From IMG/VR virus record IMGVR_UViG_3300042386_001233, positions 1 through 64,000 of that record: DNA of 64,000 nt; one strand, given 5' to 3'. How positions within the stretch are numbered: position 1 is the stretch's first letter; each line of letters begins with the position of its first letter. The position numbers were made by a program, and so were the translations under genes. Shown in pieces: positions 2,764 through 33,068 of the stretch. The notes under the pieces are model-generated. The model searched no databases and had not been told where the DNA came from. It saw nothing but the letters and a program-made list of their open reading frames with translations.

Positions 2764-2797
2764 CCATTTAATTTAAAATCTATCCCCTTCACTATAA

Positions 2798-2803
2798 GGT
2801 GTA
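2798..2803 (+). promoter_or_regulatory. GGTGTA motif, candidate phage late-promoter element
   Basis: Intergenic, 46 nt before the ATG at 2844; the same hexamer occurs at 7532 and 40589 at similar distances. Confidence 0.4.
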
Positions 2804-2843
2804 TTAAAGACTAGACATTCTATCCTTATAAAAAGGTCAAAAT

Positions 2844-3353: not shown

Positions 3354-3363
3354 AAAGAATATT

Positions 3364-4371: not shown

Positions 4372-4375
4372 TATA

Positions 4376-13703: not shown

Positions 13704-16700
13704 ATGGCTACAGCTTTTAATTTGACAGCACAACTTAATTTACGCGGTCCAAATAATGTTAACAAGATTGTTGGAGACATTAAGAAACAACTATCTGGCA
13801 TAACTGCTAATGTTAACTTGAAGTTGGACCCTAATGTTGCCAAGAACGTTAAGGCTCTTGATGCTTCGTTAAAATCGTTAAATTCTACATTATCTAGAAC
13901 CTCTACGACAGCAACTTCTGCAGCATCTGCGATATCTTCTTTTGGTAGGGCTGTTAATTCTGTTAGCATAAAAAACATACCGTCACAAATTAATGCCACG
14001 GTATCTAGTATGAATAAGCTAAATAAATCTAGCGGAACCATTGGACAGTCTTTGAATGAAGCAGCAACGGAGATGCAGGAGTTCGGTAAACAAGCAGGAT
14101 TAGCAATTAGACGATTTGCTGCATTTACTGCTGTTACTGGAGTTATTTATAGTTTAACTAATAGTATTAATCAGGGTATTCAGGCTTTTATAGAATATGA
14201 CAAAGAATTAGTTCGTTTACAACAAGTCACAGGTCAAACTGCCGGAGGCTTAAAGCAACTACAAAATTCAATTTCTCAATTAGCAACTGGTTTGGGTGTT
14301 AGTTCAAAAGAATTAACAACAGTATCAGTTACACTAGCACAAGCCGGTTTAAGTGCAAAAGATACCGAAAGAGCCTTAAGAGCATTAGCATTAAGTTCAC
14401 TAGCCCCATCATTTGACGACATGAATGAAACGGTAGAAGGTTCTATTGCTTTGATGAGACAGTTCGGCATTAGTGCTGGACAATTAGAACAAGCCCTAGG
14501 TTCTGTCAACGCTGTTGCTGCTGCGTTCGCCGTAGAAGCCGATGACCTAATTACTGCTATTCAGCGTACCGGCGGTGTGTTTGCTACTGCTAGTAAAGGC
14601 GTTAGTGAAGGAACAGATGCTCTTAATGAATTTATCTCGGTGTTTACTAGCGTGAGAGCAACCACTCGTGAAAGTGCAGAAACTATTGCTACTGGTTTAC
14701 GTACTATCTTTACACGTATTCAGAGAGGTAGCACAATTGATGCCCTTAAGGAGTTCGGTGTTACTCTAACAGACTCAGAGGGCAAATTCGTTGGAGCCTA
14801 TAGAGCCGTACAATTACTAAGTGAAGGATTGTCTAAACTAGATCCAAGAGATATTAAATTTTCTAGAATTGTAGAAGAGTTGGGCGGCTTTAGGCAGATT
14901 GGTAAAGTTATTCCTCTTATCCAACAGTTTTCTGTTGCTCAGAACGCTCTTAAGATAGCACAAACAGGACAATCTTCTTTAGCTAAAGATGCAGCAACAG
15001 CACAATTGTCATTAGCAAATCAAATTCAAAAAGTTCGTGAAGAATTCTTTGCGCTGTTTCGTGAAATTGGACAAAGCAAAGGCTTTCAATCCTTACTCAC
15101 TGGAGTATTAACACTAACAAGAGGACTAATCAAGCTTGCTGATGTTTCAAAGAGTTTGCTACCTGCGTTGAGTGTCGTTTTAGCATTTAAGGGTGCTAGT
15201 GCTTTAACTCAATTTGCTAGCGGTTTCAGCAAGGGTTTCAGGCCGGGTGGTGGTAAACCAGAAAAAGAAAGACCACGATTCGCAGACGGCGGAAGGGTTA
15301 GAAGATTTGCTACTGGTGGTGTAGTGCCCGGTAGTGGTGACAGAGATACTGTTCCAGCTATGCTAACTCCTGGTGAGTTTGTGGTGAGAAAACAAGCAGT
15401 TAAAAGTATTGGAACAGCACATCTACATAGAATAAATAAGCGAGCTAAGGGTGGCCCAATTACAGTAGAAAAATTAAAAGATATTAATCCCAATGCTGTT
15501 CAGCCTGACTATAGAAATACAGAAGAAGCAAAAAATAAAGTAGGAGAAAAAGACCAAACTTGGAGCACATACAGAGATCAAGGCAGGAGAGGGAAGGTCA
15601 GGTCAACAGCTGTTAAATATATGCAGCCAAGAGACGAAGTATACGGAGATGTAGAATACGTACCTATTCCTGATCCTAATAGGTCAGAAGTTGAAAAATA
15701 TTTTGGCAAGATAGTTCTTAAAAAAGGAATTAAGTCTATCAATCCAAAAGATAAGAGAATAAGTACTGCTTATGAAAATTATGCTCAGGATAAAGTAAAA
15801 ACAATAGGAGCTCGGTATAGTGGAGATTATGATCCTTTAGATTTTGAAACCGGAGATGTTAAATTCTATAGTTCTGAAGAAAATATTCAAAAATATGTTT
15901 CGATAAATAAAGTTCTTTCAAAAAGACTCAGACATCAAAATAAAGATAATAGAATTAAATGGCAACCAAACTCTCCAGAACAAAAAGAGTTAGAGCCAAC
16001 AACAATATATCATCCAACAGACTTAACGGAAAATAATAATTTAAAGAAAAGAATTTCAGACTGGATTTTATTATCACAAAATCAAAGAACAACTCAGGCG
16101 ATTAGAGAGGGTGACTCTTTTAGTTTTGGTGGATTAGTTCAAAAATTTGCCGAAGGAGGAGAGGCTGCTAGGATTAGGAGAGTTGGAATTATAGATAGTG
16201 ACGTATTGCGAGATAAGATTAACGCTGAAAAAGTTGCTCAAGGAATGGAGTCAATCGGATCAGATAGTATACAAGACTATACCATACAACTAGCCAAGCT
16301 AGGCGTACAAAAAAGAAAGTCTGGTGACCTCAAAAAGTTTAGAGTTATTGCTGGAGCTGCTGGTAGTGGAAAGAGCAGCTTAGCTACTGGAGTATCTGCT
16401 AATGATAACGCTACTTTGCGAAAAACTATTAGATCTCATATTATAACTCCACAAGATCTGGATAGTGTAGATGAAATTTTAACTATCACAGCAAATGTTA
16501 GTGATGCAAAATTAGAGGGCTATCTTAGAGATGCAGATAGAACATATACCGTCTCATCCTCTACTAAGGCCGAGCAAGATCTAATAAAAAGAAATAAAGA
16601 ATCCAGAGACATCACTGGACAAGGACTTTACGGCAGAGAACCAGGGAAAACAAAGGGCGTTCCTGCAGATTTTGGAGTAGAAGAAGCAACACTAATCGAT

Positions 16701-19700
16701 CAACTAGGATCAAAAAATGTTGTACTAGGAAGAAAAGAAGATGCTGAAGGTAATCTTACAAATAGATTTAGAAGAAAAAGAGAAGATGAATTACCAGAAA
16801 TAGTACAAGCAGAAGGCTTCTATACTGGTGGTTTTGCTCCTCCAACAAGAGGTCACAGAGGCGCTTTTGATACATTGCTAGCAAATGTAATTGCCAAAAA
16901 TCCAAAGGCAACACTAAAAGATATTTTGGTTTCAGTAGCTCCTAATGTTGCGATGGTCGAAGGAAAAGAAGGACTAGAGCACGCTGCTAGATATGGTATT
17001 TTTGATGCTGATTTTAGATCATTATTAGCAGATGTAAACTTTAAAGGAGCTATGATCTCTCAGGATGCACAGTCTACTCCTGGAATACTTCCCAAGGTTA
17101 TGGAAGTTCCTAGCGAAAACAATCGTAGAAAATTTGCTCGACTCAAAGGAGCGATGGCTATTACTTCCGGAAAAGAACAGGGAGTTTTAGGAAAATACGA
17201 GAGAGCAGGAATTGAGGTTACTGACATTCCAAGAATAGAGGATATTAGTGCTACTAAAGTAAGAGAATTATTATTTAGTCAAAATTATACTGAACTTGAT
17301 AAAATAGTTAATCCTGAAGTTGGGGCAATACTTAAAGGTAATCAACCACAGCTTAAAAATAGATCAGTAATGGTTCCTGTTTTATTAGAAGAGCTTCATA
17401 AAGCAGCCGAAGCTAATACTGTTTTAGCTAACCAAAAAGCAGATGATATACTTGCTAATGCTCCTGGCGGTCCATATGCTAATGTTAGTAAAAAATTAAA
17501 AACAGAACACCCAGATATTGCAGCACAAGTTAAGTCTATTAGAGAACAAAGAGATCAGTTTAAGAAGTCTATTTCTGGAGCTAAAGCCCATTCTATTATT
17601 AGTGAATTAGCAGCTGCCTATCCTGAAATTTATGGTATTGATCCTTCTCGTAGAGCAGCAACAGCAGCCGCTAGCATATCAGCAGAAGACGCTAGGTCTC
17701 ATCTAGGAGATAGAGTAAAATCGCTAGTGTCAGGAAGAGGCGCAGCAACTCCAGAACCTTCTCTGCTAGAGAGTATCAAGCAAAATGTTACCAAACAATT
17801 AGCAATTCCAAAGGGTTCAGGTACTTTACCCACAGACTCTAAGACAATTACTAGCGCCTTCTTAAATACCAAGATACCGTCTGATCCAACATTCGGTATG
17901 TTTTCAGGCAAGACTATAGATCCTGGTATAGTAAAGAAAGTTTGGAGACAAACATATCCAGGACTATCAGAAGATAAGACAGCAAGCTATATTGCTTTAA
18001 AAGAATGGCTAGAAGCACAATATAATACTCGTACCGGCGCCAAAACTGAAAAACTGTCTCAGGCCATTCAAGAATCTAAAATGGTTGGATTGGTTGGTAT
18101 GCTACCAATCGGACACGAAAAACTATCTGGCCCATTTACATGGATGCTGGGTAAAAATGCTGCTGGCGAGGATGTTTCCGTTACTGCTTCAATTATAGAA
18201 AGAGGATTGGGCAAACAATACGAGGAAGAGATTAAAAAAGCACAGAGTCACGCTGAACAAGGATCAGAACTTCTAGCTTCTGGACTAGCGTCTAAGATGA
18301 AAAAACGACCAGAGTCTTTAAGATCTCTTGATAAAGCTCAGCTTGAAACTTTAGGTCAGGGAAATATTGAAGGAGCATATGTTGAACAGGCATTAGCCAG
18401 ACTATGGGCCAATTTAGACAATGTTAGTACCAGAACTCGACCAATAGACTACCCAGACGGTCTCGGAGAATCTGCTGAACTATTTCCTGGCATATCTCCA
18501 ACTATGCCGACAGAAGTTAAGAGAACAATTAATAGTGATAGTAGAAGTGATGCCATAGAAGAATTCCAAAGGTATTTCAGACTTATTCATGCAATACCAG
18601 AACCAAAAGCCAAGAAAGAAGCAGTTAAAGCATTAGCTTCAGGCGGAGAAGTACAAAGATTCATGGCTGGTGGAGTAGCAACCAAAACCAGAAAACCAAA
18701 AGAAGTTTTTGGAACTGGAGAAACAGCATTCCCATCAAGAATATCAAAAAAATATGCCGAAGAACAACATTCAGCTAGTGAAAGCTTAAGAGCTAAATTA
18801 TCATGGGATAAGTATCCTAAAGATGAAAGAATAATGGTTAACGAAGATAAGGTACAAGAAGCCTATCAACAACCATTTGATAGAGATAGGTTTACCTCAT
18901 CATTTAAAGAAAAAATTAGTCGTGACTCGCTCTTTGAGAGAATGTCAGATTTTGCTAAGTTTATAGGACTGCCACAAGAAGACTTATCTCTAGCACTACC
19001 ATTACAATTGGATTTTGGAGCAAGCTCAAGAGGGGGTGGGTTGGGAATGTTCTCTGCTGCTGAATTCGGAAAAGGAGCATCTGGAATTAGGCCATATGAA
19101 GGCTATGATCTATCTAAATTTGGATATGGAGAAAAAGAAAAGCAAGAATCTTATGGATTAGAAAAACTTATAGCAGCAAAAGAAAAAGAAATAAAAAAGA
19201 TTAGAAAAACTCCTACTGAAACTTTTGATGATGGTAGTTTCTCTTTTGACAGTGAGGCATTTCAGAAGACTTATATTGAGTTAGATAATCTTAAAAATAG
19301 ATTTTTTAGATTAAAAGACCTAAAACGTGAAGCAGAAAAGGCGGCCCTTGCTGAACAAAATACCATTTCCTCAGCTACTGGTCGTGGAACCATCGGCTTT
19401 GCTCCTTCTATGGGATATGCTTCCACCACACAGAATCACTCGCTATATCATGAAATGACACATCAGCTATTTGAAGGATTAAGAACAAGATCAGCAGAAA
19501 GCTTTACTAAATATAGAGATAGAGTATCGTCTTTATTCTCTGGAGATAATGACGATTTAGCAGATGCTTTTGACTCTTTAACGGCAGTAACAGCAGGCGG
19601 CGGATATACTAGTGCTGATGTTGTATATGGTAGAAGTTATAAGTCAAATAACTTAAGTCAAATACTTTCAAGCTATTATCGTCAGAATCTTGATTCTTCT

Positions 19701-25700: not shown

Positions 25701-28700
25701 GATAAAGATAAAGATGGAAATATAACACAAGAGGAATGGAAAAATAATGTATTAGCACGAGCAAAGGTTCGTAAGCTAGAAAATACCATAAAAATAATTG
25801 AAAAAGAAATAGCTGAAGGAAAACCTGTTCCTGTAAACTTTGAAGCAATGAAAAGAACACTAGGTTTCGCCAAAATAGATGCAGGTATGGCCGCTGCTCC
25901 TGGTGACAATAAGGCTTTTATCGCTAGACAAAAACGTATTGATGATAATATGAATAAAAGATTATTGGGGGGTGGTTCTATTAATAATCCTGATGGTTCT
26001 TATGTTTTTAATAGAGAACTTAATAAGATTTATGATCGTAGATCAGCTTTTGAAGAAGAAAGAAGAGCACAGAGAGCTAAGGACGAAAACGCAACGGACG
26101 AAGAAATATTTGATCGCACAGTAGAGGCCTATGGGGCTGGAGACTCTAACTATTGGCGCAACAGTATGGGAGTCACCGAACTGCCAAATGTTTATGATAA
26201 TTCTAGAACTTTAGACGTTATTCGCAATGAGAGTGATCTCTCCAGTAAGGGAGATCCTAATGGAGAAAAAACTAGAGCATATATAGACGGATATATACAA
26301 TCACAAGGAGCAAGACAACAAGCGGACAGAGTGGCTCGTGGTATTGGGGCAGAGATTGATTCTCCAGATATTGCCGTAACAGGAACTCAGGGACCAGTAG
26401 ATAATCTTAACTATTTAATAGACCAAAAAGAAAAGGGCAGAGTAGCAGAAAAAGCAGCAAGAGACGAAAACTTTAAACAAGAGAATAAAAATAGAGAAGG
26501 CGCTGATGCAAGACAGGCAAAATTGGATCAAAGAGATAAAGAACTAGGTATAGATACTAGCGGCATTAATCGAGATATATATGAGAGTGGTGGAGGTTTT
26601 TCAAATCAGCCAGGAAGTGGCAGAAAAGTTACGATAGAAGAACAAAAACAAAGAAAAAGAGAAAAGGCTATAGCTGCTAGGTTTTCATTTACAGATAAAA
26701 CAGGTAAATACTCCACTACTGGAACTATTGACAAAGTGGATTTTGAAAAAGGTACTGTTAGAATAGCTAAAATTGATCCAAAAACTGGTGAGCCTATTAC
26801 TAGAACCGTTCCGGTTTTTGCCGATGGCCAAACAGAAGAAGAGATTAAAGCTTCTGGTAGAGATCCCGAAAGATTTAAGGTTGGAGAGAAAGAAGAACAA
26901 GTATACACTACTGTACCCCTAGACAAACTTAGTGACCAGTCCAGAGACAAGGCCAGATCCCATGGTTTGGAAAAAGAAGCAGACAAAGCCAAGGCTGGTG
27001 AAAACTTCTCAATAGGGGAGGCTACTGGCAAAAAGCGTACAATATCTGGTAAAATATTCAGAGTAGACGAAAAGGCCGGAACAGCTGTCGTACAAAGAGA
27101 TAGTGGTAAGCTGGTCACTATACCATTAGAGAAACTTGCTCCAGAGTCTAGAAATATAGCACTAGATCAAGCCAAGACAGCTACTACTGTTACTGATTTA
27201 ACGCAGAAACAAATGGATGCTGATGTTGGTAATATTGATGTTACTTCATCATTACCAGAACCACCAATTCCATTAGCTGAAGACTTTACTGATAGAGCAA
27301 ATGAAGTTCGTCAAGAGACGATGAATAATGCTGCTTTAGAACAGACAAAGATGGATCAGTTGCCGATGATGTCTGAGCCGGTACCAACTTCGGGCACTAT
27401 TGATCCTATTACTGGCAAGGTTGTTGGAAATAATGTTTCTATGGACTTGAATCCAGATGGAACTCGTACACCAGAACAATTAAACATATTAAGTCAGCAA
27501 GCTACCAGAGATGCCGATAGGCGTAATTCTAACGCAAGATATGAGGAGCTTAGAGGTCGATCAAAAGCAGAGGATGCATACGACAGATCATGGCTTGGAG
27601 AAAACTGGCCCAAAGAATGGGGAGGAGTACAAAAACCAAAACGAAGATTAACTACAAAAGAACTAGAAGAACTTGGAGCGATGGAAAGCGAGAGAGGTGT
27701 TCCTGCATTATCAAGATTAGGAGCTAATACACGAGCAGAACAAACAAGAAGATCAGCAGGATTAGACGAAGCACAAATTGAAAGTTTGAGTCAACAAAAA
27801 ACAGAACAGTTTAAAGCTGAACTTGAGAAAAAAAATGACGCAGAAGGTGGGGTGGCTGTTGGACTAGCTGCTCAAAGAGCAGTAGTTCCATTATTGGCTG
27901 GTGCTACAGCTATTGCCGCCGCTCCTGCTTTAGTTCCAGCAGGAATAATTGGGGCTGGACTTACTATTGCTGGGGGTGTTACTGCTAGTTTGGGCGCTAA
28001 TAAATTACAAGATATGGCATTAGAAGGTACGGATTTTGATAAGAGACAAAGAGAATTGGCAGAAAAAAGGCCAGGAGCAACTGCTGTTGGTTCTTTATTG
28101 CCAGGATTACTAACGGGCAATCCACTGACTGGTGCAACCACTATGGGTCGAGCACTAGCAACAAGAGCTGCTAGCGGAGCTACTGAAGCAGCATTAGGGG
28201 CCGGTATCAGAGGAGCAACTAGTGGTGGGGATTTTGGTACTTATGAAGATTTCCGGAATGACTTTCTTTCTGGAGTTATTCTTCCAACGTCTAATTTTGG
28301 AAGTAAGGGATCCAGAAATTATAGTCGTCCAGAAGGTCCAGCAAAACCTACGTCTTTAAAGGATGTTGCAGCAACAGTTAGAGATGAACAACTAGCAATC
28401 AGAGAAGAAAACGTTCTTGCTGGTAATGAGAGAATAGCAACTAAACGAAAACAAGACGAAGTTAGAAAAGCGGCACAAGCAGAACAAAGAATCAAAGATG
28501 AAGTAGAAGCAGTGAAAGAATCAGGAAGAGAAAAGGCTGTTTTTGATTTTATGAAGCCACTCATTACTCGTCCAGATAAGAGTAATAGCCCTATAGTAAA
28601 GGGCGTAGCAGACATGGTACTTAATCATCATAGAGATTTGATGGCTAGAGTAAAATCTAAGGATATATTAGAAAAAGGTCGTGGTCTGAATGATGAGCAG

Positions 28701-31700
28701 ATTACAACACAGCTTACAGATGCTGGAATAGATCCTGAACGAGCAGCAGCTATAGTTAGAAAAAGAACAGAAGCCAATAATAAAGCACAATCTGATCTTG
28801 CTTTGGAAAGAGGAACAAGAAGAGCGGAAGCTAAAGAGAGACTAGATGCTGAATATAGAAAAGAAGTTGAAGGAGTTACAGATCCTAAAGAAACAGCAAA
28901 AATAAAGGCTAGATTCCAAGAACAATTAAATAAAGAAGCTTCTTTGATTGATGTCGATATTAACGACAAGACGTCAGCAAATAAAGCCGGTATAACAGTT
29001 CAAGAGCTGAAACAACAAAGAGCAGCAGAAGCTCAAGCCAAAGATAAAGCAGAGTCTGATAAACTAATACAAGAGTTTGATTCTACTCTAGGATCAAGTA
29101 AGCCAACAACTATTGATAATCTTCCTATGGGAGAACCTCTTGATTTAGGTGTGGACCCGCTTGCGCCAATAACATCTGCCAAAGATAATGCTGCTACTAC
29201 GGCAGCTAGTACAAAACCAGTCGATGCTGCAACAGTAGCAGCAAAAAACCAGACAGTAGTCAAGGCAGCAGAACAAGAAAATACATCTTCGCTACAAACA
29301 TCAGCGATACCGCAGCCCAAACCCTATAATCCTACAGATTATCCTATTATGGATAGTATTATGAGAGGAGGAAAGAACGGCCATTATGGTCCGATGGGTA
29401 CTACTAATATAACAGGTAAACAAAATATTCATGGAATAAGCGGATGGAAAACTAGACTCATACCAAAAGACGACGCGTCTGCAGCAAAAATTAAAGAATT
29501 TTTAGATACTCATCCAGATATAGGGGAATATAAGTTAGCATTAAATGAGGGACCAGTACCAGTATTTAGTGTCTATTTCAAAAAGGGCACCAAAGATGAA
29601 GCACTATCTTTTGCACAAGCTAGTGAAAAAGGACTAAAAGATAGTTTAGATCCTCGTTTATATCAGGGTGCTGATACTCTGCTAGAAGGGACAAATATTT
29701 CCGCAAGATTTGATGCTAGAGATCTAAAGTATGAATCAGCATCATCAATTATAGATAGACAACTAGAGAATTCTCCTTTTAGTAGAGGATTTTTAAAAGC
29801 TGAAGAACTGAATCTACAAATACCTGCATCAAATACGGCAGCTGGGTCAACGGCTAGCAGAGCAATGCCAAGCATTACTGCTGGCACCAGAGGAGTACCA
29901 GATACTGGGTATGTTGATTGGTTAAAAACAAAAAAGTTTTTGGCGAAAGATCCTAAAAAGATAGCTAGTCTAGATGCAGAGATACAAAGAGCTACTAACG
30001 TAGCAGATGATTGGCTAAAAGAAAATATGTCAGACCTCTACAGCTCATCTGCTGAACGAACAACTAGAGAATCAACTACTCAAACCGGTGGGGTAAAACC
30101 ACAACAACAAGCAGTAGTTGAAACAGCAATCAGAGATGCCACAAGCACACCAACCAAATCCGGTTTTGTTCGAGACAAATCGTTATCGACAGACAAAGTA
30201 GATGATCTAGCTTCTGCCGGATTTGGAGTTATAAGTCCAGACCAAGAAGTAGAAAGTGTTATAAGAGGAGCAAGAGAAAATTCTCTTGGCGTTTTAACTA
30301 AACCAGCAGCGTTATTACAGCCAGAAACATACCAAAAATATGCAGACCAACTATTAGAACTAGAAAAATCAGGAAAAATAAAAATAACCAAAGGCGCTTC
30401 ATTTGGTACTAGTGGCCAACCAAGTATATTTGTAGGAAAACCAGAAAATGTAGATACTCTTGCAAAAGCTTTTGAATCTGAAACAGCAAGAACACGAGAA
30501 ATGGGGGTTCCAGCATCAGATGAATTTCACGAAACGGTAGGAAAGGCACTAGGATATAGTAAAGATAGTAGAGAACTATTTAGATTAAGAAAAGATTGGG
30601 ATAAAGCAGGATTAGATATAGATACTATTCAAGATAGATTACAAACTAGCCGTGGTGCTGCTGCTAGATATATGGTATCAGAAATTAATAAGGCCAAAGA
30701 ACAAGCATCAGTCGAGCAAGGAGTAAAAGAATCAACAAACCCGCCCATCAAACCTCCTATTGATGGAGATGAATTTGAATTAGGAAACTTGGGAGATGAA
30801 ACCCCAGAAGAAAAGGCTCGACTAGACGCACTATATCCTCCGGGTTCTGAGGGATTTTTGGGCCCAATAAAGCCAGATAATGTATTACCTGAAGCAAGAG
30901 CAGAATCACAAGCTCGCACAGTCGAAACCAAACCATCCTCTTTTGAACAAAATCCAGAAGACTTTACAAAGCTTATTGATGAAACTCTTTCTCCATTCCC
31001 AGAAGACTTTTTCCCAGATGGTTCTTCAAAACCAAATGCTAGAGTAGAAGCAGAAATTGATAGTAATACAGTAAACGCTTCTTCTCCAGAAGCTTTAAAA
31101 GCCTCTGCAGAAGCTCAACAAAAACTAGCAGCACAAAAATTAGCAGCAAAATCTCCAGAACAAATATCTGTAGAAAAAACATATGGTCCTTTATATAGAG
31201 AAGCTAAAAAAGCCAACGATACAGCAGAGATGGCCAGAATACGATCAGAAGCTAATGCAGAATTTAAGAAACGCTCTCAAGAAGCTTCAACCAGAGCTGA
31301 AGATAAAAAGAATAGTTTCCTTCCTGTTATGGGTAAGGTCTTAAAGATAGCTGCCCCCATTGGAACTGCTATAGGTTATGGATTAGGATCATTATTAACC
31401 AGGGATAAGAGAAAAGAAGAACCTCAAGATCCAGCCTCTAAACTAAAAAATGCCTCTAGTTTACAGGAAGTCTACGATTTAATAAGCGCAAACGATAGGG
31501 GAACAAAAGGCTTTAGCGCAGTAGAAATTGCCATGAAGCTTAGAGAAATAGACCCTAAAGCATATGACAAGAGCGGTGATGAGTATGTTAATCTAGGAGA
31601 ATTGGCAGGAATGCCAGATAGTGCATATGATGCATACTTAGACAGATTGAAAGACAGGGCAGCAACAGCAAAACCCGTCAACTATCCAGATGTTCCATCT

Positions 31701-33068
31701 TTAGACAAAGATAAAAATATTAAACCATCTTTTGGCGCATATATACCATCTCTAGAGAGTACAATGGCTCCTCAACAGTATGGGGCCGGAGTTTATCAGG
31801 GTCCGTCATCCATGCCCACATTTGATTTAACAAAAACTAAGACCGATGCTGCAGCAATGCCAGAAGTTAATGTCAAAGATAATAATGCTGCTCCGATGCC
31901 AGGAACTAAGAAACCAGTAAAGAAAGCTCTCGGGGGTTTAATCTATGCTTCTGAAGGAATGAAGATTCCTAGACCTAATACAATACTATCTAGTTCACAA
32001 TCTAATAGTGGACTATATGATAGATATGCCTCTTCAGTATCACAACCAATAGATATTGGCAAGTCTTCAGAAAATTCTTTTTCAAGATATATAAAATCTG
32101 GTGGTAGAAGAATGTCTGACAACGTCGAGGTTAGACCCAAATTAACAACAGATGAAGTACTACAGTATTTTGAAAACAAAGAAGCAAAAGAACGTCGTGA
32201 AGGTGCTCCTCCTGCTGGCGGTAGGGTTCAATATGCAACTGGTGGAATAGTATACGCAAATAATGGAGCACTAATAAATGCCCAACCAATGGGAACTGAC
32301 ACTGTTCCAGCAATGTTAACTCCTGGCGAGTTTGTTGTCAAAAAAGAACAAGCTCAAAAACACGCTCCAATACTACATGCTATAAATAGTGGAGCATATA
32401 GTAGGGGTGGTATTGTTAATTATTTGGCTAATGGTGGTGTTGTTAATCCAAACTATTTATCGTATGGCGGTTATCCCGACATGGGAGATTTACAAAATCG
32501 TCGCAATCCTTTAAAGGAGATGAGTCAGAGAGTAGCCGAATATAATGCTTCTATGGCTCCTCAACCAGTACCAATGCCCGCTCCAGCACCGGTTCAAGCA
32601 CCCTCTCCAGCACCAGCGGGTGGTGTATCTAGTAATGTTGGTATAGATGTAGCTAATTTACAGTCCATAGTAACTAATTTGCAGAAAACGGTCAATGACT
32701 TTGGAGCATCGATACCTTCACTTTCACAAGTGGCAGAAAGTATGAATACTGGTTTTAGTTCTTTCGTAACAGGAGGATCCCAAATAGGACAAATGTTAAA
32801 TAGCGCTACAGCGGGTCTACAACAAGTTAATCTTCCTGATAGGATTAGACTAGAAGGTTCAGTAAGCAATAACGTAAATATTAACGGTGCTGAAGCAGCC
32901 GCTAGAGTTATGGATACTATGGGTGGGGCTATTCAACAGGGAGCAAATGAACAAATAGGCAGATTCGCAGGAGCTATTAATCGAGGTATTGGTAATTTGG
33001 GTGAAGGAGCATTAGGTCCAGATACTGGTCAAATTATGGGTCAAATAGGTGGTTCAAATTATGTTTAA
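13704..33068 (+). CDS. Giant tape measure protein (6454 aa) with TP901-type core and many inserted domains
   Basis: N-terminal TMP core (LQQVTG..VSVTLAQAG..AVAAAFAVEADDL..TIATGLRTIFTRIQ); repeated AxGG and DTVPAMLTPGEFVV TMP motifs; long helical segments; position after tube and chaperone genes. Confidence 0.9.
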   Translation: MATAFNLTAQLNLRGPNNVNKIVGDIKKQLSGITANVNLKLDPNVAKNVKALDASLKSLNSTLSRTSTTATSAASAISSFGRAVNSVSIKNIPSQINATVSSMNKLNKSSGTIGQSLNEAATEMQEFGKQAGLAIRRFAAFTAVTGVIYSLTNSINQGIQAFIEYDKELVRLQQVTGQTAGGLKQLQNSISQLATGLGVSSKELTTVSVTLAQAGLSAKDTERALRALALSSLAPSFDDMNETVEGSIALMRQFGISAGQLEQALGSVNAVAAAFAVEADDLITAIQRTGGVFATASKGVSEGTDALNEFISVFTSVRATTRESAETIATGLRTIFTRIQRGSTIDALKEFGVTLTDSEGKFVGAYRAVQLLSEGLSKLDPRDIKFSRIVEELGGFRQIGKVIPLIQQFSVAQNALKIAQTGQSSLAKDAATAQLSLANQIQKVREEFFALFREIGQSKGFQSLLTGVLTLTRGLIKLADVSKSLLPALSVVLAFKGASALTQFASGFSKGFRPGGGKPEKERPRFADGGRVRRFATGGVVPGSGDRDTVPAMLTPGEFVVRKQAVKSIGTAHLHRINKRAKGGPITVEKLKDINPNAVQPDYRNTEEAKNKVGEKDQTWSTYRDQGRRGKVRSTAVKYMQPRDEVYGDVEYVPIPDPNRSEVEKYFGKIVLKKGIKSINPKDKRISTAYENYAQDKVKTIGARYSGDYDPLDFETGDVKFYSSEENIQKYVSINKVLSKRLRHQNKDNRIKWQPNSPEQKELEPTTIYHPTDLTENNNLKKRISDWILLSQNQRTTQAIREGDSFSFGGLVQKFAEGGEAARIRRVGIIDSDVLRDKINAEKVAQGMESIGSDSIQDYTIQLAKLGVQKRKSGDLKKFRVIAGAAGSGKSSLATGVSANDNATLRKTIRSHIITPQDLDSVDEILTITANVSDAKLEGYLRDADRTYTVSSSTKAEQDLIKRNKESRDITGQGLYGREPGKTKGVPADFGVEEATLIDQLGSKNVVLGRKEDAEGNLTNRFRRKREDELPEIVQAEGFYTGGFAPPTRGHRGAFDTLLANVIAKNPKATLKDILVSVAPNVAMVEGKEGLEHAARYGIFDADFRSLLADVNFKGAMISQDAQSTPGILPKVMEVPSENNRRKFARLKGAMAITSGKEQGVLGKYERAGIEVTDIPRIEDISATKVRELLFSQNYTELDKIVNPEVGAILKGNQPQLKNRSVMVPVLLEELHKAAEANTVLANQKADDILANAPGGPYANVSKKLKTEHPDIAAQVKSIREQRDQFKKSISGAKAHSIISELAAAYPEIYGIDPSRRAATAAASISAEDARSHLGDRVKSLVSGRGAATPEPSLLESIKQNVTKQLAIPKGSGTLPTDSKTITSAFLNTKIPSDPTFGMFSGKTIDPGIVKKVWRQTYPGLSEDKTASYIALKEWLEAQYNTRTGAKTEKLSQAIQESKMVGLVGMLPIGHEKLSGPFTWMLGKNAAGEDVSVTASIIERGLGKQYEEEIKKAQSHAEQGSELLASGLASKMKKRPESLRSLDKAQLETLGQGNIEGAYVEQALARLWANLDNVSTRTRPIDYPDGLGESAELFPGISPTMPTEVKRTINSDSRSDAIEEFQRYFRLIHAIPEPKAKKEAVKALASGGEVQRFMAGGVATKTRKPKEVFGTGETAFPSRISKKYAEEQHSASESLRAKLSWDKYPKDERIMVNEDKVQEAYQQPFDRDRFTSSFKEKISRDSLFERMSDFAKFIGLPQEDLSLALPLQLDFGASSRGGGLGMFSAAEFGKGASGIRPYEGYDLSKFGYGEKEKQESYGLEKLIAAKEKEIKKIRKTPTETFDDGSFSFDSEAFQKTYIELDNLKNRFFRLKDLKREAEKAALAEQNTISSATGRGTIGFAPSMGYASTTQNHSLYHEMTHQLFEGLRTRSAESFTKYRDRVSSLFSGDNDDLADAFDSLTAVTAGGGYTSADVVYGRSYKSNNLSQILSSYYRQNLDSSRGTTPIPEDITKNLASLSTQSTAAKRAREYRPINPQVNEALLQGGAKFGMTQEKINRMEDNGKEEFLTTLIEKAPQLDQNLQGILDSTLTELLSGAGIQRQKYASGGKASRRVDFEAGVGQSPFGGSVSKRLSQSIYNLQKNTGLSDSEFNEIKKTADTYGYNEEEFKEYLAKRIQEKKNKEGLRTNPSALAQQLMPQTRVSTPRQLALAQALKDTSNDIGYRPSTLETIAQARTDVGNATRYAVGGIAKVGKKEDKQYGQISITEDAGMINVGYQKGDNRQGYATGYKMRNNLYYVGLSKATKGYGPRLYDVLMEAVTEKGAMLTSDRSSVSEDAKRVWEYYFKNRGDVKKTPLKPSDWTVNSNLIDPKLYGKKETWPPATDPAWTLQTGYSKSPKLITNTNEVIRKRSGGRLSFETGGTVPALVSNGEAYIPPKIAKRIGYSNLNRMNQADRNGMSKFSSGGISVFKGPGTGTSDSIPANLPVGSFILREKATKALGFNKGGAVPAQRFATGGGVTSMIMEWLSSDMTARTKPKMAPRPDVVNRASVVASNDTTKALDILVKSLNQLGLSAANSADILNKGGQVSYKTIQKALAEDIKRLKISGASIQSIVAAETTLANIRKKSKEEVTKQKNIQGLTSARGNSSTKIVGGQTIGDLQAGSGAGQQAIETQAQMLAAARIRRRGGKVTEKQRSEIMESSYIDSASRITGIKKKEFKAAGISGGDIQKYIAESMKDRKSLAQMDKQLIALKTNELTNSAAYIAASNAEQKRMLTEVQQATKEEISTRRKIINDLAAQNGTKGVGAAGLRDTRNSPILNQIKGFIKSPGKVMGGISAAAGLTAGASDMIAKNIYNMSTTEGQGKAAKTSAAIQSSGTILSTGMAAASQMAAIPVIGPYVAALTAVGTAAAAAADYFYDFTGAQKAATVEFERSVRAKEIGIAMDGLDRAFQNFEKDMGNITLQKALEQAIGNTSSLQIKDNMAERDNAKAEFSLKNRSWSDIFSGNFKGSAQMDALEQGAMDSEMSQKLSPISDKAMALYDKQISSGKSIEDIVNNVRTGNKDAVNAGAAVAFNANPKLWSELEQKVKASGDASEANVLKIKRGIVARELLTNAELQAAVKRSKLERDMEASNRAGRRLAETFDHISETIDQSIQRMQRESEIRQAQANDRVEARRGNAGFDERAVNNRNVGVLTNPKAYQNDPRRIEEAIRAGSSGMSPELAQKMAGGARLEATLPNVMRNAISTELKSNASLGLDEAADAARRKGTEAIRNSGLSEADQKVAIDKLNARIEDEKKKVQDNEKGTPAEQVDSFTDSISDLGPEIANIFGNAGKKLDDIIQARQGIYDTFAKNLQAASEAAKKAREFFSKARDIRYDAGMDLREAQTGVGESFSEAKAKSDSSIARLTGGVTDPQAIGRNIDALMARRDQQMKDRDAALSNPNLTQDQQKDAATKFAKDIQATNNALNDNREALDKLANSAEVAQKALDEVKNIRGLQQDRENFVNQLLTNTPEEADKLNQTFIRLQRNLSGGLNNASNQRDARNAFNDTLRRTGNLREATRAGNTVLADQRKQTLQLMQDPGFRGMMTLNMKNQGMNDQQIDKRFRDQEGMLMQQMAIESGLINNPMVRQALAAKQDPNADPAMKRAADQFLQATGLQAKASEEQGRLELANVQNLLVTATDELRMSIDTLTTTINGSLGKDGERVPGVAGPVVPVPAGARGVARPPRPMATGGKVKTQYASTGQLIDFSPKGTDTVPAMLTPGEFVVNARSTAKHLPLLKAINSGAGVDATSNMSKGGVVYLDNGGLIDEFRKIDANKSNFLEVGEIDLKMIQLLDRDKDNKVSFGEYSSRVKSDGSSGSSRSGSGSSVKSGFKAQDMSFEQYYNNRAQKYAKRYQGTGDEVPRDTDKFANGGMVTPYYLAEGTNRPLSRPVMVALPPKKDPIETARAARKQGVPTKRRPSLVPGDPRAKDAEPSFFRLDLNEDGILDRKEGYPYQDLDKDKDGNITQEEWKNNVLARAKVRKLENTIKIIEKEIAEGKPVPVNFEAMKRTLGFAKIDAGMAAAPGDNKAFIARQKRIDDNMNKRLLGGGSINNPDGSYVFNRELNKIYDRRSAFEEERRAQRAKDENATDEEIFDRTVEAYGAGDSNYWRNSMGVTELPNVYDNSRTLDVIRNESDLSSKGDPNGEKTRAYIDGYIQSQGARQQADRVARGIGAEIDSPDIAVTGTQGPVDNLNYLIDQKEKGRVAEKAARDENFKQENKNREGADARQAKLDQRDKELGIDTSGINRDIYESGGGFSNQPGSGRKVTIEEQKQRKREKAIAARFSFTDKTGKYSTTGTIDKVDFEKGTVRIAKIDPKTGEPITRTVPVFADGQTEEEIKASGRDPERFKVGEKEEQVYTTVPLDKLSDQSRDKARSHGLEKEADKAKAGENFSIGEATGKKRTISGKIFRVDEKAGTAVVQRDSGKLVTIPLEKLAPESRNIALDQAKTATTVTDLTQKQMDADVGNIDVTSSLPEPPIPLAEDFTDRANEVRQETMNNAALEQTKMDQLPMMSEPVPTSGTIDPITGKVVGNNVSMDLNPDGTRTPEQLNILSQQATRDADRRNSNARYEELRGRSKAEDAYDRSWLGENWPKEWGGVQKPKRRLTTKELEELGAMESERGVPALSRLGANTRAEQTRRSAGLDEAQIESLSQQKTEQFKAELEKKNDAEGGVAVGLAAQRAVVPLLAGATAIAAAPALVPAGIIGAGLTIAGGVTASLGANKLQDMALEGTDFDKRQRELAEKRPGATAVGSLLPGLLTGNPLTGATTMGRALATRAASGATEAALGAGIRGATSGGDFGTYEDFRNDFLSGVILPTSNFGSKGSRNYSRPEGPAKPTSLKDVAATVRDEQLAIREENVLAGNERIATKRKQDEVRKAAQAEQRIKDEVEAVKESGREKAVFDFMKPLITRPDKSNSPIVKGVADMVLNHHRDLMARVKSKDILEKGRGLNDEQITTQLTDAGIDPERAAAIVRKRTEANNKAQSDLALERGTRRAEAKERLDAEYRKEVEGVTDPKETAKIKARFQEQLNKEASLIDVDINDKTSANKAGITVQELKQQRAAEAQAKDKAESDKLIQEFDSTLGSSKPTTIDNLPMGEPLDLGVDPLAPITSAKDNAATTAASTKPVDAATVAAKNQTVVKAAEQENTSSLQTSAIPQPKPYNPTDYPIMDSIMRGGKNGHYGPMGTTNITGKQNIHGISGWKTRLIPKDDASAAKIKEFLDTHPDIGEYKLALNEGPVPVFSVYFKKGTKDEALSFAQASEKGLKDSLDPRLYQGADTLLEGTNISARFDARDLKYESASSIIDRQLENSPFSRGFLKAEELNLQIPASNTAAGSTASRAMPSITAGTRGVPDTGYVDWLKTKKFLAKDPKKIASLDAEIQRATNVADDWLKENMSDLYSSSAERTTRESTTQTGGVKPQQQAVVETAIRDATSTPTKSGFVRDKSLSTDKVDDLASAGFGVISPDQEVESVIRGARENSLGVLTKPAALLQPETYQKYADQLLELEKSGKIKITKGASFGTSGQPSIFVGKPENVDTLAKAFESETARTREMGVPASDEFHETVGKALGYSKDSRELFRLRKDWDKAGLDIDTIQDRLQTSRGAAARYMVSEINKAKEQASVEQGVKESTNPPIKPPIDGDEFELGNLGDETPEEKARLDALYPPGSEGFLGPIKPDNVLPEARAESQARTVETKPSSFEQNPEDFTKLIDETLSPFPEDFFPDGSSKPNARVEAEIDSNTVNASSPEALKASAEAQQKLAAQKLAAKSPEQISVEKTYGPLYREAKKANDTAEMARIRSEANAEFKKRSQEASTRAEDKKNSFLPVMGKVLKIAAPIGTAIGYGLGSLLTRDKRKEEPQDPASKLKNASSLQEVYDLISANDRGTKGFSAVEIAMKLREIDPKAYDKSGDEYVNLGELAGMPDSAYDAYLDRLKDRAATAKPVNYPDVPSLDKDKNIKPSFGAYIPSLESTMAPQQYGAGVYQGPSSMPTFDLTKTKTDAAAMPEVNVKDNNAAPMPGTKKPVKKALGGLIYASEGMKIPRPNTILSSSQSNSGLYDRYASSVSQPIDIGKSSENSFSRYIKSGGRRMSDNVEVRPKLTTDEVLQYFENKEAKERREGAPPAGGRVQYATGGIVYANNGALINAQPMGTDTVPAMLTPGEFVVKKEQAQKHAPILHAINSGAYSRGGIVNYLANGGVVNPNYLSYGGYPDMGDLQNRRNPLKEMSQRVAEYNASMAPQPVPMPAPAPVQAPSPAPAGGVSSNVGIDVANLQSIVTNLQKTVNDFGASIPSLSQVAESMNTGFSSFVTGGSQIGQMLNSATAGLQQVNLPDRIRLEGSVSNNVNINGAEAAARVMDTMGGAIQQGANEQIGRFAGAINRGIGNLGEGALGPDTGQIMGQIGGSNYV

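What the first reader, a model, noticed from the sequence alone, without database searches (positions are those of the whole stretch)
13704..33068. Giant tape measure protein as a modular cargo polyprotein carrying enzymes and sensors
Between an N-terminal TMP core (to ~15250) and a central helical block (~21340-24780), and again after it, the single ORF carries many unrelated globular motifs. These are PD-(D/E)xK-like (15760, 18360), P-loop (16353), TxGH nucleotidyltransferase (16818), HExxH (19449), GNAT-like (20610), four EF-hands (25149-25736), two SHD1-like (26682-27165) and further unknown domains. TMPs are ejected during infection and some carry muralytic or peptidase domains, but an array of cytoplasm-type enzymes in one TMP would be a virion-delivered effector or anti-defence payload. 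Folded domains of this kind should not fit a tail lumen, so they must be unfolded, cleaved off or held outside the tube.
Basis: partly seen in the sequence, partly recalled or inferred. Interest (0 to 1): 0.92.

Follow-up and report, generated by a model that had tools for sequence, protein, structure and literature searches.

The report
Giant modular enzyme-carrying phage tape measure
One 6,454-residue phage tail tape measure gene is a string of swappable modules, several of them enzyme-like with conserved catalytic motifs, so it may carry a multi-enzyme payload into the host, though delivery is untested.

Summary
Window 13704-33068 (+) is one uninterrupted 6,454-codon ORF. Its first ~520 residues are a TP901-type tape measure (TMP) core. 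It recurs in independent assemblies of a ~244-kb uncultured aquatic phage.

Module status:
- Supported: a P-loop domain (zeta-toxin-like kinase fold) fused to a PPAT-like HIGH nucleotidyltransferase, an HExxH domain, a GNAT-fold domain and EF-hands.
- Motif-level only: one PD-(D/E)xK-like minidomain.
- Not supported: the other PD-(D/E)xK site and the SHD1 repeats.

Catalytic motifs stay invariant in relatives down to ~31% identity.

At least 332 giant relatives (3.5-7.9 kaa) are mosaics. Modules are present, absent or reordered. Breakpoints cluster at a short [FY][AS]xGGxV linker and a longer junction element, found 3-9 times per protein. The family almost completely lacks cysteine.

Best reading: a polyvalent effector protein built on a TMP chassis. 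It would be ejected unfolded ahead of the DNA and might be cut at its linkers by its own HExxH domain. Virion presence, cleavage and delivery are all inferred. A pure very-long-tail ruler remains a live rival.

Verdict: new variant of a known kind, high interest.

The parts
13704..33068 (+). Whole giant TMP ORF, 6,454 aa, with 0 Cys, 29 His and 24 Trp
13704..15263 (+). M0: TP901-type tape measure core (aa 1-520) with a hydrophobic segment at aa 475-505
   Evidence: Pfam PF10145 and TIGR01760 above cutoff, PHROG TMP families. Present in ~114/119 relatives. Hydrophobic segment.
15264..15503 (+). J1: junction element (aa 521-600). It consists of FAxGG, the G-x-D-T-V-P-A-M-L-T-P-G-E-F-V-V stretch, a helix (L..IN) and xGG.
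   Evidence: Internal repeat, PHROG 13338, junction HMM
15504..16121 (+). M1: variable module (aa 601-806).
   Evidence: In ~34/119 relatives. Only 3 close full-length homologues. No Pfam hit.
16146..16793 (+). M2a: P-loop kinase-like alpha/beta domain (aa 815-1030), Walker A at aa 884-891
   Evidence: AF2 pLDDT 70-89. Foldseek top hit is zeta toxin 6epg_F, prob 0.99, E 6.5e-3. GxAGxGK[ST] is invariant in 16 relatives.
16794..17303 (+). M2b: HIGH-signature (PPAT-like) nucleotidyltransferase domain (aa 1031-1200). Motifs are GGFAPPTRGH at aa 1042-1051 and DISATKVRE at ~aa 1180-1188.
   Evidence: Both motifs are invariant. Sub-threshold HIGH_NTase1_ass in 12/16 members and CTP_transf_like in 4. 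PDB profile hit 3gmi, E 0.0025. Distant profile hits are Pfam CTP_transf_like proteins. The AF2 core has low confidence.
17304..18308 (+). M2c: mostly helical part of the M2 block (aa 1201-1535)
   Evidence: AF2 helices with pLDDT 70-85 for aa ~1181-1340 and low confidence after that. Moves together with M2a/b in relatives.
18309..18632 (+). M2d: PD-(D/E)xK-like minidomain (aa 1536-1643). Candidate residues are E1556, E1561, D1582 and E1604-x-K1606.
   Evidence: D and K invariant, E's at least 90% conserved in 20 relatives. The PT[ED]xK[RL] motif is found in 98/119 giants. AF2 pLDDT is only 53-62. No PDB profile hit.
18666..20003 (+). M3: HExxH (zincin-like) globular module (aa 1655-2100), HEMTH at aa 1916-1920
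   Evidence: YHE[ML]THQL is invariant in 12 relatives. AF2 pLDDT ~87-97 over most of aa 1701-2100, with HExxH on a helix after a strand. No structural or sequence match.
20010..20423 (+). M4a: small helical bundle (aa 2103-2240), opened by YASGG and closed by YAVGG linkers
   Evidence: AF2 pLDDT 80-93 for aa ~2130-2190. Linker positions.
20436..20933 (+). M4b: GNAT-fold domain (aa 2245-2410). Motif-A-like K-G-Y-G-P-R-L-Y-D lies between a strand and a helix.
   Evidence: AF2 pLDDT 75-95 with order beta4-alpha-beta-alpha-beta. Foldseek top PDB hits are GNATs: 8iym at prob 0.98-1.00 (E 0.07-0.12) and weaker ones at prob 0.4-0.8 (1yx0, 2fl4, 5jph, 4pv6, 4xpk, 5z6n). BFVD gives N-acetyltransferase hits. 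Motif conserved in 16 relatives. No Pfam or PDB sequence hit.
20934..21263 (+). J2: double, degenerate junction element (aa 2411-2520)
   Evidence: AF2 gives beta-hairpin + helix units with pLDDT mostly 74-92.
21264..24863 (+). M5: conserved central block (aa 2521-3720). It is Ala-rich and Pro-poor with a hydrophobic segment at aa 2876-2913. It is the presumed helical ruler or channel part.
   Evidence: Present in 63-112 of 119 relatives. 2.2% Pro with a 274-residue Pro-free run. Structure not predicted here.
24864..25139 (+). J3: junction element (aa 3721-3812)
   Evidence: tblastn matches TMPs of Nodularia siphoviruses.
25140..25763 (+). M6a: EF-hand region (aa 3813-4020) with loops at aa 3816, 3837, 3981 and 4000
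   Evidence: Pfam EF-hand_5 39.2, EF-hand_1 37.6 and EF-hand_6 31.7 bits, all above cutoff
25764..32198 (+). M6b-f: hypervariable region (aa 4021-6165). It has charged and low-complexity linkers, small beta-rich repeats (aa ~4327-4490), an unknown aromatic/His-containing stretch (aa ~5200-5700) and a hydrophobic segment at aa 5872-5891.
   Evidence: Shared by only 2-16 of 119 relatives. No Pfam or stand-alone homologues. Its inter-junction segment falls in a cluster of 8.
27804..28283 (+). M6c: Gly/Ala-rich hydrophobic (glycine-zipper-like) membrane segment (aa 4701-4860)
   Evidence: Hydropathy peak 2.03 at aa 4725-4767. Sub-threshold Phage_holin_3_6 hit, E 2.4e-4.
32199..32453 (+). J4: last junction element (aa 6166-6250)
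   Evidence: Present in 112/119 relatives.
32454..33065 (+). M7: Gly-rich C-terminal tail (aa 6251-6454). It is the presumed tip-proximal end.
   Evidence: Conserved in 28-68 of 119 relatives. Weak PhageMin_Tail similarity, E 0.0017. Its placement at the tail tip is an inference from other siphoviruses.
12406..13592 (+). Two small overlapping ORFs (95 and 300 aa) just upstream, in the position of tail assembly chaperones
   Evidence: Position only. No family hit.

Best explanation
This is the tape measure protein of an uncultured aquatic phage with a genome of about 244 kb. The TMP has been expanded into a polyvalent protein.

Shown:
- A canonical TP901-type TMP core is followed by exchangeable modules.
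- The modules are separated by a short [FY][AS]xGGxV linker and by a longer junction element (beta-hairpin + helix).
- Modules with conserved motifs are a zeta-toxin-like P-loop kinase domain fused to a PPAT-like nucleotidyltransferase, a PD-(D/E)xK-like minidomain, a zincin-like HExxH domain, a GNAT-fold domain and EF-hands.
- There is also a conserved Pro-poor central block and several hydrophobic or glycine-zipper segments.

Inferred mechanism:
- The whole cysteine-free chain is loaded into the tail in an extended or unfolded state.
- It is expelled ahead of the DNA.
- Its hydrophobic segments insert into the host membrane, as in other TMPs.
- The soluble modules refold in the periplasm or cytoplasm and act in the first minutes of infection, in envelope remodelling, host takeover or counter-defence.
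- The HExxH domain may cut the chain at the double-glycine linkers to release them.
For: TMP identity. Gene position between small upstream ORFs and tail-fibre-like genes.

Family: 332 giant relatives, on contigs up to 248 kb.

Mosaicism: coverage by relatives falls from ~114/119 (aa 1-600) to 2-16/119 (aa 3850-6100). Module q1647-2112 lies before q813-1653 in 7 loci.

Linkers and junctions:
- The linker motif occurs 16 times against 1 expected. 53% of 867 homology breakpoints lie within 30 aa of a linker, while those windows cover 12.7% of the length.
- Relatives carry 6-22 linkers per giant, against a median of 1 in shuffles.
- The junction element occurs 3-9 times per giant.

Purifying selection on catalytic motifs down to ~31% identity.

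Folds: P-loop domain with zeta toxin as top hit. GNAT fold. Confident HExxH domain. EF-hands above Pfam cutoffs. NTase by consistent sub-threshold and transitive hits.

HExxH pervasiveness: 86/119 giants carry it and 37 carry more than one, in several distinct sequence families, although His is only 0.41% of residues. This mirrors the metallopeptidase hallmark of polyvalent proteins (PMC5512222, section 8). That paper also lists GNAT and zeta-like kinase domains.

Cysteine: 18 Cys in 691,300 aa of 120 giants, against 1.19% in the window's other ORFs. This fits a chain that must stay unfoldable and free of disulfides.
Against: - There is no direct evidence that the modules are in the virion, are cleaved, or enter the cell.
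- Several assignments are weak. The NTase core and the PD-(D/E)xK minidomain have low AF2 confidence. No enzyme module reaches a Pfam cutoff. Foldseek E-values are 0.003-0.07.
- The HExxH domain matches no known peptidase structure.
- The P-loop+NTase block is essentially confined to these TMPs, and no informative stand-alone relative of the HExxH module turned up, so no biochemical function can be transferred.
- A cultured relative at motif level, Nodularia phage 2AV2, has a 3,404-aa TMP and a 795-nm tail (PMC6293099, Table 1). Very long TMPs can therefore simply mean very long tails.
- About one quarter of the giants lack any HExxH, so self-cleavage cannot be universal.
- How three or more copies of such a chain fit in a tail tube is unsolved.
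Confidence: 0.5

Rival explanations
1. Pure ruler. The whole chain only sets the length of an extremely long tail, about 1 micrometre at 1.5 A per residue. The enzyme-like modules are exapted spacer material with no catalytic role.
For: Nodularia phage 2AV2 has a 3,404-aa TMP with the same junction element and a 795-nm tail (PMC6293099 Table 1). The P-loop+NTase block is essentially TMP-specific and no informative stand-alone relative of the HExxH module was found. AF2 gives low confidence for about half of aa 801-2000.
Against: Spacer material should not keep Walker A, TxGH, ISxTxVR, HExxH and GNAT motif-A residues invariant at 31-50% overall identity. Close relatives differ about two-fold in length through module gain and loss, which would mean wildly varying tails. 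Three domains fold confidently as globular units.
Confidence: 0.15
2. Penetration toolkit. The modules are delivered, but only to the envelope or periplasm, where they help breach or remodel it. They would act on cell-wall precursors or need Ca2+. They are not cytoplasmic takeover or anti-defence effectors.
For: Known TMP add-ons are muralytic (own knowledge: mycobacteriophage TM4, T5 pb2). Zeta-type kinases act on a peptidoglycan precursor, and polyvalent proteins carry them for this presumed purpose (PMC5512222, section 25). EF-hands fit a Ca2+-rich extracytoplasmic site. Total Cys avoidance fits an oxidising compartment.
Against: ATP/NTP-using kinase and nucleotidyltransferase domains and an acyl-CoA-using GNAT need cytoplasmic cofactors (established biochemistry). 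No lysozyme, transglycosylase or M23 domain was detected.
Confidence: 0.2
3. Assembly-phase enzymes. The modules act in the producing cell, for example by modifying tail or host components. They are trimmed off at the linkers before tail completion, so the virion carries only the core and central block.
For: Other TMPs are C-terminally trimmed during assembly (own knowledge: lambda gpH, T5 pb2). The linkers look like processing sites, and an in-cis HExxH domain exists.
Against: Fusing enzymes to a structural protein made late gives no obvious advantage. Cys avoidance across the enzyme modules is hard to explain for purely cytoplasmic function.
Confidence: 0.1
4. Assembly or annotation artefact: a chimeric contig, or fused genes read through a sequencing error.
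For: None, beyond the unusual length.
Against: The same ORF appears in independent ENA and IMG/VR assemblies. 332 relatives of 3.5-7.9 kaa have the same N-terminal core and the same junctions. There are no internal stops.
Confidence: 0.01

Closest known systems
Polyvalent proteins of phages and conjugative elements (Iyer et al. 2017, PMC5512222)
   Same: A very large single polypeptide encoded among late or structural genes. It combines unrelated catalytic domains, including GNAT, zeta-toxin-like kinase, nucleases and nucleotidyltransferases. Zincin-like HExxH peptidase domains are pervasive and often multiple, and are proposed to separate the parts. The domains are reshuffled repeatedly.
   Different: The described polyvalent proteins ride on MuF or portal-associated proteins, head proteins or conjugation substrates. 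The word 'tape' does not occur in that paper. Here the chassis is a tape measure protein. The NTase is a HIGH/PPAT type, not Pol-beta. The modules are delimited by a repeated linker and junction motif, and the chain is cysteine-free.
TP901-type tape measure proteins, including very long ones (Nodularia phage vB_NpeS-2AV2, 3,404 aa, 795-nm tail) and those with embedded lytic motifs
   Same: An N-terminal core above the Pfam and TIGRFAM cutoffs, the expected gene position, hydrophobic segments, and the same junction element (2 copies in 2AV2).
   Different: This protein is about twice as long. It carries several non-muralytic enzyme-like globular domains and EF-hands. It has a hypervariable 2.3-kaa region and 16 linker motifs against 2 in 2AV2.
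TMP-related modular effectors of actinobacterial contractile injection systems (Sle1 type; PMC13277306, PMC11126660)
   Same: A TMP-derived scaffold carries exchangeable functional domains. It is packed inside a tail-like tube and translocated to membranes.
   Different: Those belong to phage-tail-like nanomachines of Actinobacteria, not to phages. They are far smaller and carry one functional domain. No sequence relationship was tested here.
Ejection or cargo proteins of short-tailed phages (T7 gp16, crAss001 cargo proteins; own knowledge)
   Same: Large proteins with enzymatic parts that must pass a narrow channel unfolded and act at or inside the host envelope.
   Different: Those are stored in the capsid, not fused to a tail ruler.
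Zeta toxin / PezT kinases and phosphopantetheine adenylyltransferase (PPAT/CoaD)
   Same: The P-loop domain's best structural match is a zeta toxin. The NTase motifs GxFxPxTxGH and ISxTxVRE are the PPAT-type signatures (own knowledge, with weak hits).
   Different: No Pfam Zeta_toxin hit, and no CTP_transf_like hit above cutoff. The two domains are fused in one block found essentially only in TMPs. Substrates are unknown.

Membership tests
TP901-family phage tail tape measure protein | Core domain matching PF10145 / TIGR01760 above the curated cutoff | tested here: met
   PF10145 scores 75.8 bits (cutoff 33.2). TIGR01760 scores 90.9 bits (cutoff 28.8)..
TP901-family phage tail tape measure protein | Gene lies in the tail module, after tube and chaperone genes and before tip and fibre genes | tested here: inconclusive
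   Downstream genes carry fn3, FGE-sulfatase-like and DUF285 domains typical of fibres. Upstream ORFs have the right sizes but no family hit.
TP901-family phage tail tape measure protein | Protein length sets tail length | not testable with these tools
   No isolate or micrograph exists. 6,454 aa x 1.5 A gives about 970 nm (arithmetic).
Polyvalent proteins (Iyer et al. 2017) | One giant polypeptide combining several unrelated catalytic domains | tested here: met
   P-loop kinase-like, HIGH NTase, HExxH and GNAT-fold domains.
Polyvalent proteins (Iyer et al. 2017) | Zincin-like metallopeptidase domain(s) as the commonest component | tested here: inconclusive
   HExxH is invariant and lies on a helix in a confident model. 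86/119 relatives have at least one and 37 have more than one. No structural or sequence match to a known zincin was found.
Polyvalent proteins (Iyer et al. 2017) | Delivered into the recipient cell with the DNA | not testable with these tools
   Inferred only from the TMP chassis.
Zeta-toxin-like P-loop kinases | Walker A plus kinase-type P-loop fold | tested here: met
   Motif invariant. AF2 pLDDT 70-89. Foldseek top hit 6epg_F, prob 0.99, E 6.5e-3.
Zeta-toxin-like P-loop kinases | Sequence membership (Pfam Zeta_toxin) | tested here: not met
   No hit. Only generic P-loop families appear, at E > 0.006.
HIGH-signature (cytidylyltransferase-like) nucleotidyltransferases | N-terminal (H/T)xGH motif and C-terminal ISxTxxR motif at compatible spacing | tested here: met
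   TRGH at aa 1048-1051 and ISATKVR about 130 residues later. Both are invariant in 16 relatives.
HIGH-signature (cytidylyltransferase-like) nucleotidyltransferases | Profile match above the curated threshold, or a confident Rossmann-like fold | tested here: inconclusive
   HIGH_NTase1_ass in 12/16 members (best E 2e-4) and CTP_transf_like in 4, all below cutoff. PDB hit 3gmi at E 0.0025. Distant profile hits include a true CTP_transf_like protein. AF2 pLDDT < 50 for aa 1032-1181.
GNAT acetyltransferases | GNAT core fold with motif A (R/Q-x-x-G-x-G/A) between beta4 and alpha3 | tested here: met
   AF2 pLDDT 75-95 with the order beta-beta-beta-beta-alpha-beta-alpha-beta. K-G-Y-G-P-R-L lies at the beta4/alpha3 turn. 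GNATs head the PDB hit list (8iym prob 0.98-1.00, others 0.4-0.8) and appear among the top BFVD hits, but at E 0.003-0.07.
GNAT acetyltransferases | Sequence membership (Pfam or PDB profile) | tested here: not met
   No Pfam hit and no PDB profile hit.
PD-(D/E)xK nucleases | Conserved E...D...(D/E)xK residues | tested here: met
   For the site at 18360: D1582 and K1606 are invariant, and E1556, E1561 and E1604 are at least 90% conserved in 20 relatives.
PD-(D/E)xK nucleases | alpha-beta-beta-beta-alpha-beta restriction-endonuclease fold | tested here: inconclusive
   AF2 pLDDT 53-62 with mostly helices. No PDB profile hit. The site at 15760 is untestable.
EF-hand | Pfam EF-hand models above cutoff | tested here: met
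   EF-hand_5 39.2, EF-hand_1 37.6 and EF-hand_6 31.7 bits on aa 3800-4020.
SHD1 (SLA1 homology domain 1) | Pfam PF03983 match | tested here: not met
   No hit on aa 4300-4500 even at E <= 1. Relatives that carry PF03983 do not align to this region.

The most novel reading that the evidence does not exclude
Long-tailed phages of a widespread aquatic lineage use the tape measure protein as a programmable delivery rail. Enzyme cassettes are threaded unfolded through the tail, bounded by a universal double-glycine linker and junction element. They are released in the host by in-cis HExxH peptidases. If so, the first protein to enter the cell is a customised multi-enzyme takeover or counter-defence kit, and the P-loop-kinase + PPAT-like block performs a nucleotide or cofactor chemistry not yet described for phages.
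Probability: 0.3. Interest if true: 0.9.

Novelty: new variant of a known kind. Interest (0 to 1): 0.72.

Why it matters
Tape measure proteins are usually seen as helical rulers with, at most, a cell-wall-cutting add-on. Here hundreds of them carry conserved kinase-, nucleotidyltransferase-, peptidase-, acetyltransferase- and nuclease-like modules in shuffled combinations.

If these modules are delivered, the tail lumen becomes a second cargo compartment beside the capsid. The first minutes of infection by these abundant aquatic phages would then be shaped by injected enzymes.

The repeated linker and junction motif, together with the near-absolute lack of cysteine, give concrete and testable rules for what can travel through a tail tube. 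Those rules are also relevant for engineering phage-tail-like protein delivery devices. The finding also bears on the open question of how TMP length relates to tail length when the TMP is not all helix.

Tried and rejected
- Single-sequence PDB searches of both halves gave only coronavirus spike heptad-repeat constructs for aa 17-132 (E 4e-4) and noise. I read this as coiled-coil composition, not homology.
- Megablast of the left 12 kb against INPHARED phages found no match.
- Alignments A7 and A8 were discarded. MAFFT stacked unrelated module fragments on their shared FAxGG ends, and identities to the query fell to 13-30%. A9, built with multi-module scaffold rows, restored the expected identities.
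- PDB profile searches for the HExxH, GNAT-like and PD-(D/E)xK-like modules found nothing meaningful.
- Searches for stand-alone homologues of the HExxH module and of aa 5200-5700 returned only a few fragment-like proteins without annotation.
- IMG/VR scans for the hypervariable region found only two non-identical relatives. It was therefore not chosen for structure prediction.
- SHD1 was not detected.
- The PD-(D/E)xK site at 15760 has only three homologues, at 80-90% identity, so conservation is uninformative.
- P0067 was scanned for Pfam PF28597, seen in some relatives, but that model is not in the local Pfam copy.
- Direct DNA repeats at the junctions are short (29-61 nt at 64-90% identity, differing mainly at synonymous sites). 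A recent duplication or an assembly repeat is rejected.
- The hydrophobic-moment analysis gave only weak support that the central block is helical.


Full report
**What is there**

Window 13704-33068 (+) is one ORF of 6,454 codons without an internal stop. Its composition is unusual. It has no cysteine, 29 His and 24 Trp. Most of the His and about half of the Trp sit in aa 570-2520. The other ORFs of the window have 1.19% Cys.

The first ~520 residues are a bona fide tape measure core:
- Pfam PhageMin_Tail, E 5.5e-21.
- TIGR01760 tape_meas_TP901, 90.9 bits against a cutoff of 28.8.
- Five PHROG tape-measure families.

The start codon is supported by an N-terminus conserved in relatives. A public gene call (P0001) begins 102 codons too late.

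The gene follows two small overlapping ORFs. It precedes large proteins with fn3, FGE-sulfatase-like and DUF285 domains, which is the usual place of a TMP in a tail module. The upstream genes have no family hits.

**Not an artefact**

The neighbouring gene is indexed in 120 assembly blocks. An ENA contig of 243.7 kb carries the same 6,454-aa call. Two IMG/VR contigs from different samples are identical over the 5,336 aa held.

**Family and habitat**

A word-indexed search found 332 relatives of roughly 3,600-7,900 aa, nearly all with PF10145, on contigs up to 248 kb. None is in the INPHARED phage collection at DNA level. Genome-collection hits are misbinned contigs in lake and marine MAGs of inconsistent taxonomy. 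The lineage is therefore uncultured and aquatic, and the host is unknown.

**Modularity**

I mapped BLAST coverage of the query by 119 relatives:

| Region (aa) | Relatives covering it (of 119) |
|---|---|
| 1-600 | ~114 |
| 600-800 | 34 |
| 800-1300 | 91 |
| 1300-2100 | 60-96 |
| 2100-2400 | ~46 |
| 2400-3800 | 63-112 |
| 3850-6100 | 2-16 |
| 6200-6250 | 112 |

- In 29 fetched loci the homology blocks break at the same places. In seven loci the block equivalent to aa 1647-2112 lies before the block equivalent to aa 813-1653. Modules are thus gained, lost and reordered.
- The breakpoints coincide with a short motif, [FY][AS]xGGxV. It occurs 16 times in the query against 1.0 expected, with a maximum of 4 in 500 shuffles.
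- 461 of 867 breakpoints lie within 30 aa of a motif, although those windows cover only 12.7% of the protein. The breakpoints are not independent, so the binomial p-value overstates this.
- In 119 relatives the motif occurs 6-22 times (median 12) against a median of 1 in shuffles. It is often in tandem with a 9-residue period.

**Junction element**

A longer junction element recurs at aa ~521-600, 2411-2520 (double, degenerate), 3721-3812 and 6166-6250. It is made of the linker, a G-[TS]-D-[TS]-[VI]-P-A-x-L-x-x-G-E-F-V stretch, a helix ending L..IN, and another xGG.
- It occurs 3-9 times per relative.
- AF2 models the J2 copies as beta-hairpin plus helix with pLDDT mostly 74-92.
- The copies share only 29-61 nt at 64-90% DNA identity, so they are kept by selection on the protein, not by recent duplication.
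- The same element occurs in the TMPs of cultured Nodularia siphoviruses. vB_NpeS-2AV2 has two copies at aa 985-1109 of a 3,404-aa TMP, and its tail is 795 nm (PMC6293099, Table 1).

**Are the modules real domains?**

- **P-loop.** The literal Walker A match is chance level (1 observed, 1.16 expected). However, GxAGxGK[ST][ST] is invariant in 16 relatives down to ~33% identity. AF2 folds aa ~821-1030 as an alpha/beta domain with pLDDT 70-89. The best PDB match is a zeta toxin (6epg_F, prob 0.99, E 6.5e-3), followed by weak matches that include P-loop NTPases such as MinD, ParA and MeaB.
- **Nucleotidyltransferase.** GGF[AS]PxTxGH and [DG]IS[AG]TxVR[DEQ], about 130 residues apart, are invariant.
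  - From my own knowledge these are the PPAT-type versions of the HIGH and ISxTxxR signatures.
  - Support is consistent but sub-threshold. HIGH_NTase1_ass hits 12 of 16 members (best E 2e-4) and CTP_transf_like hits 4. A profile hit to UPF0348/HIGH_NTase1 structure 3gmi falls on the ISGT motif (E 0.0025), and an NMNAT hit falls on the HIGH motif (E 1.7).
  - The weakest hits of an exhaustive profile search include a protein that is a clear Pfam CTP_transf_like (9e-17).
  - AF2 did not fold the core confidently.
  - That exhaustive search of 1.84 billion representatives found only 108 proteins. Nearly all are giant TMP-like proteins or fragments. This 840-residue block is essentially TMP-specific.
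- **PD-(D/E)xK at 18360.** E1556, E1561, D1582 and E1604-x-K1606 are invariant or nearly so in 20 relatives. The minidomain is the most widespread small module, with PT[ED]xK[RL] in 98/119. AF2 confidence is only 53-62 and no profile hit exists. This is motif-level support only.
- **PD-(D/E)xK at 15760.** Untestable.
- **HExxH.** One occurrence against 0.01 expected. YHE[ML]THQL is invariant.
  - AF2 folds aa ~1701-2100 with pLDDT mostly 87-97. The motif lies on a helix that follows a strand. Invariant Asp residues lie on a following helix.
  - This matches the zincin core described in PMC5512222. That comparison is my inference and was not measured.
  - No PDB, BFVD or sequence match was found.
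  - Across the family, 86/119 giants have at least one HExxH and 37 have several, in at least four sequence types.
- **GNAT.** aa 2245-2410 fold with pLDDT 75-95 as beta4-alpha-beta-alpha-beta, with a motif-A-like K-G-Y-G-P-R-L at the right turn. The best PDB match is a GNAT acetyltransferase (8iym, prob 0.98-1.00), other GNATs follow at prob 0.4-0.8, and phage N-acetyltransferases are among the top BFVD hits. E-values are only 0.003-0.07, because a 1,000-residue multi-domain model was the query. No sequence-level hit exists.
- **EF-hands.** They pass Pfam cutoffs.
- **SHD1.** Not detected.

**Other features**
- Hydrophobic segments lie at aa 475-505, 2876-2913, 4715-4767 (Gly/Ala-rich, with a sub-threshold holin-like hit) and 5872-5891.
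- The central block aa 2521-3720 is Ala-rich with 2.2% Pro and a 274-residue Pro-free run. Its helical nature was not tested structurally.
- Some relatives carry staphylococcal-nuclease, SHD1 or further EF-hand Pfam domains.
- The 120 listed proteins of the family (including the window's own) contain 18 Cys in 691,300 residues, and 112 have none.

**Interpretation**

The closest described concept is the polyvalent protein of phages and conjugative elements (PMC5512222). These are giant late-gene products that combine GNAT, zeta-like kinase, nuclease, NTase and, above all, zincin-like HExxH peptidase domains. They are thought to be delivered with the DNA and separated by the peptidase. That paper never mentions tape measure proteins. 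TMP-derived modular effectors are known from actinobacterial contractile injection systems (PMC13277306, PMC11126660).

I therefore read this gene as a polyvalent protein built on a TMP chassis. Domain content, modular exchange, linkers and Cys avoidance are shown. Packaging in an extended state, ejection ahead of the DNA, membrane insertion through the hydrophobic segments, refolding, and cleavage at the double-glycine linkers by the HExxH domain are all inferred.

The main rival is a pure ruler for a tail of about 1 micrometre, made plausible by the 795-nm tail of 2AV2. That rival does not explain invariant catalytic residues or two-fold length differences among relatives.

**Verdict**

It is a new variant of a known kind.

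Noticed in passing
window 13704-33068 and 120 relatives (P0001-P0120): Near-absolute cysteine avoidance. There are 18 Cys in 691,300 residues and 112 of 120 giants have none, against 1.19% Cys in the window's other ORFs. His and Trp are also about 0.4% each.
   Followed up: partly
window 33089-36598, 45476-49228, 49676-51226: Three proteins downstream of the TMP each carry an FGE-sulfatase-like domain. The 1,250-aa one also has DUF285 repeats (E 2e-66). They are probably receptor-binding or fibre proteins.
   Followed up: no
window 53285-59698: A second very large ORF (2,137 aa) on the same strand has no Pfam hit at all.
   Followed up: no
window 87-2021 and 3364-4371: A 644-aa protein is made of 11 DUF5122 beta-propeller repeats (E 1e-156). 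A 335-aa protein ends in a proprotein-convertase P-domain.
   Followed up: no
window 13704-14009: The public gene call for this protein (P0001, 6,352 aa) starts 102 codons downstream. The conserved N-terminus in 13 relatives supports the ATG at 13704.
   Followed up: yes
window 12000-34000: AT skew of the + strand is 0.12-0.26 inside the giant ORF and at most 0.09 in the flanks. This reflects its Ala/Lys/Glu/Gly-rich, purine-rich coding strand.
   Followed up: no
L013-L015, L019-L021, L024: In these relatives the HExxH module precedes the P-loop/NTase block, the reverse of the window's order. In L041, L045, L050, L053 and L056 the PD-(D/E)xK-like minidomain lies ~100-1,300 nt upstream of the GNAT-like domain, with no HExxH-sized module between them.
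   Followed up: partly
L072 (Nodularia phage vB_NpeS-2AV2, 9046-19260): The TMP of this cultured siphovirus is 3,404 aa for a reported 795-nm tail. That is about 2.3 A per residue, more than a pure alpha-helix would give.
   Followed up: no
window aa 17-132 (13752-14099): The N-terminal stretch matches coronavirus spike S2 heptad-repeat constructs at E 4e-4. I read this as shared coiled-coil composition, not homology.
   Followed up: no
window 25460-25909, 26606-27118 (- strand): Antisense ORFs of 149-170 aa lie inside the giant gene. They are probably a by-product of its skewed composition.
   Followed up: no
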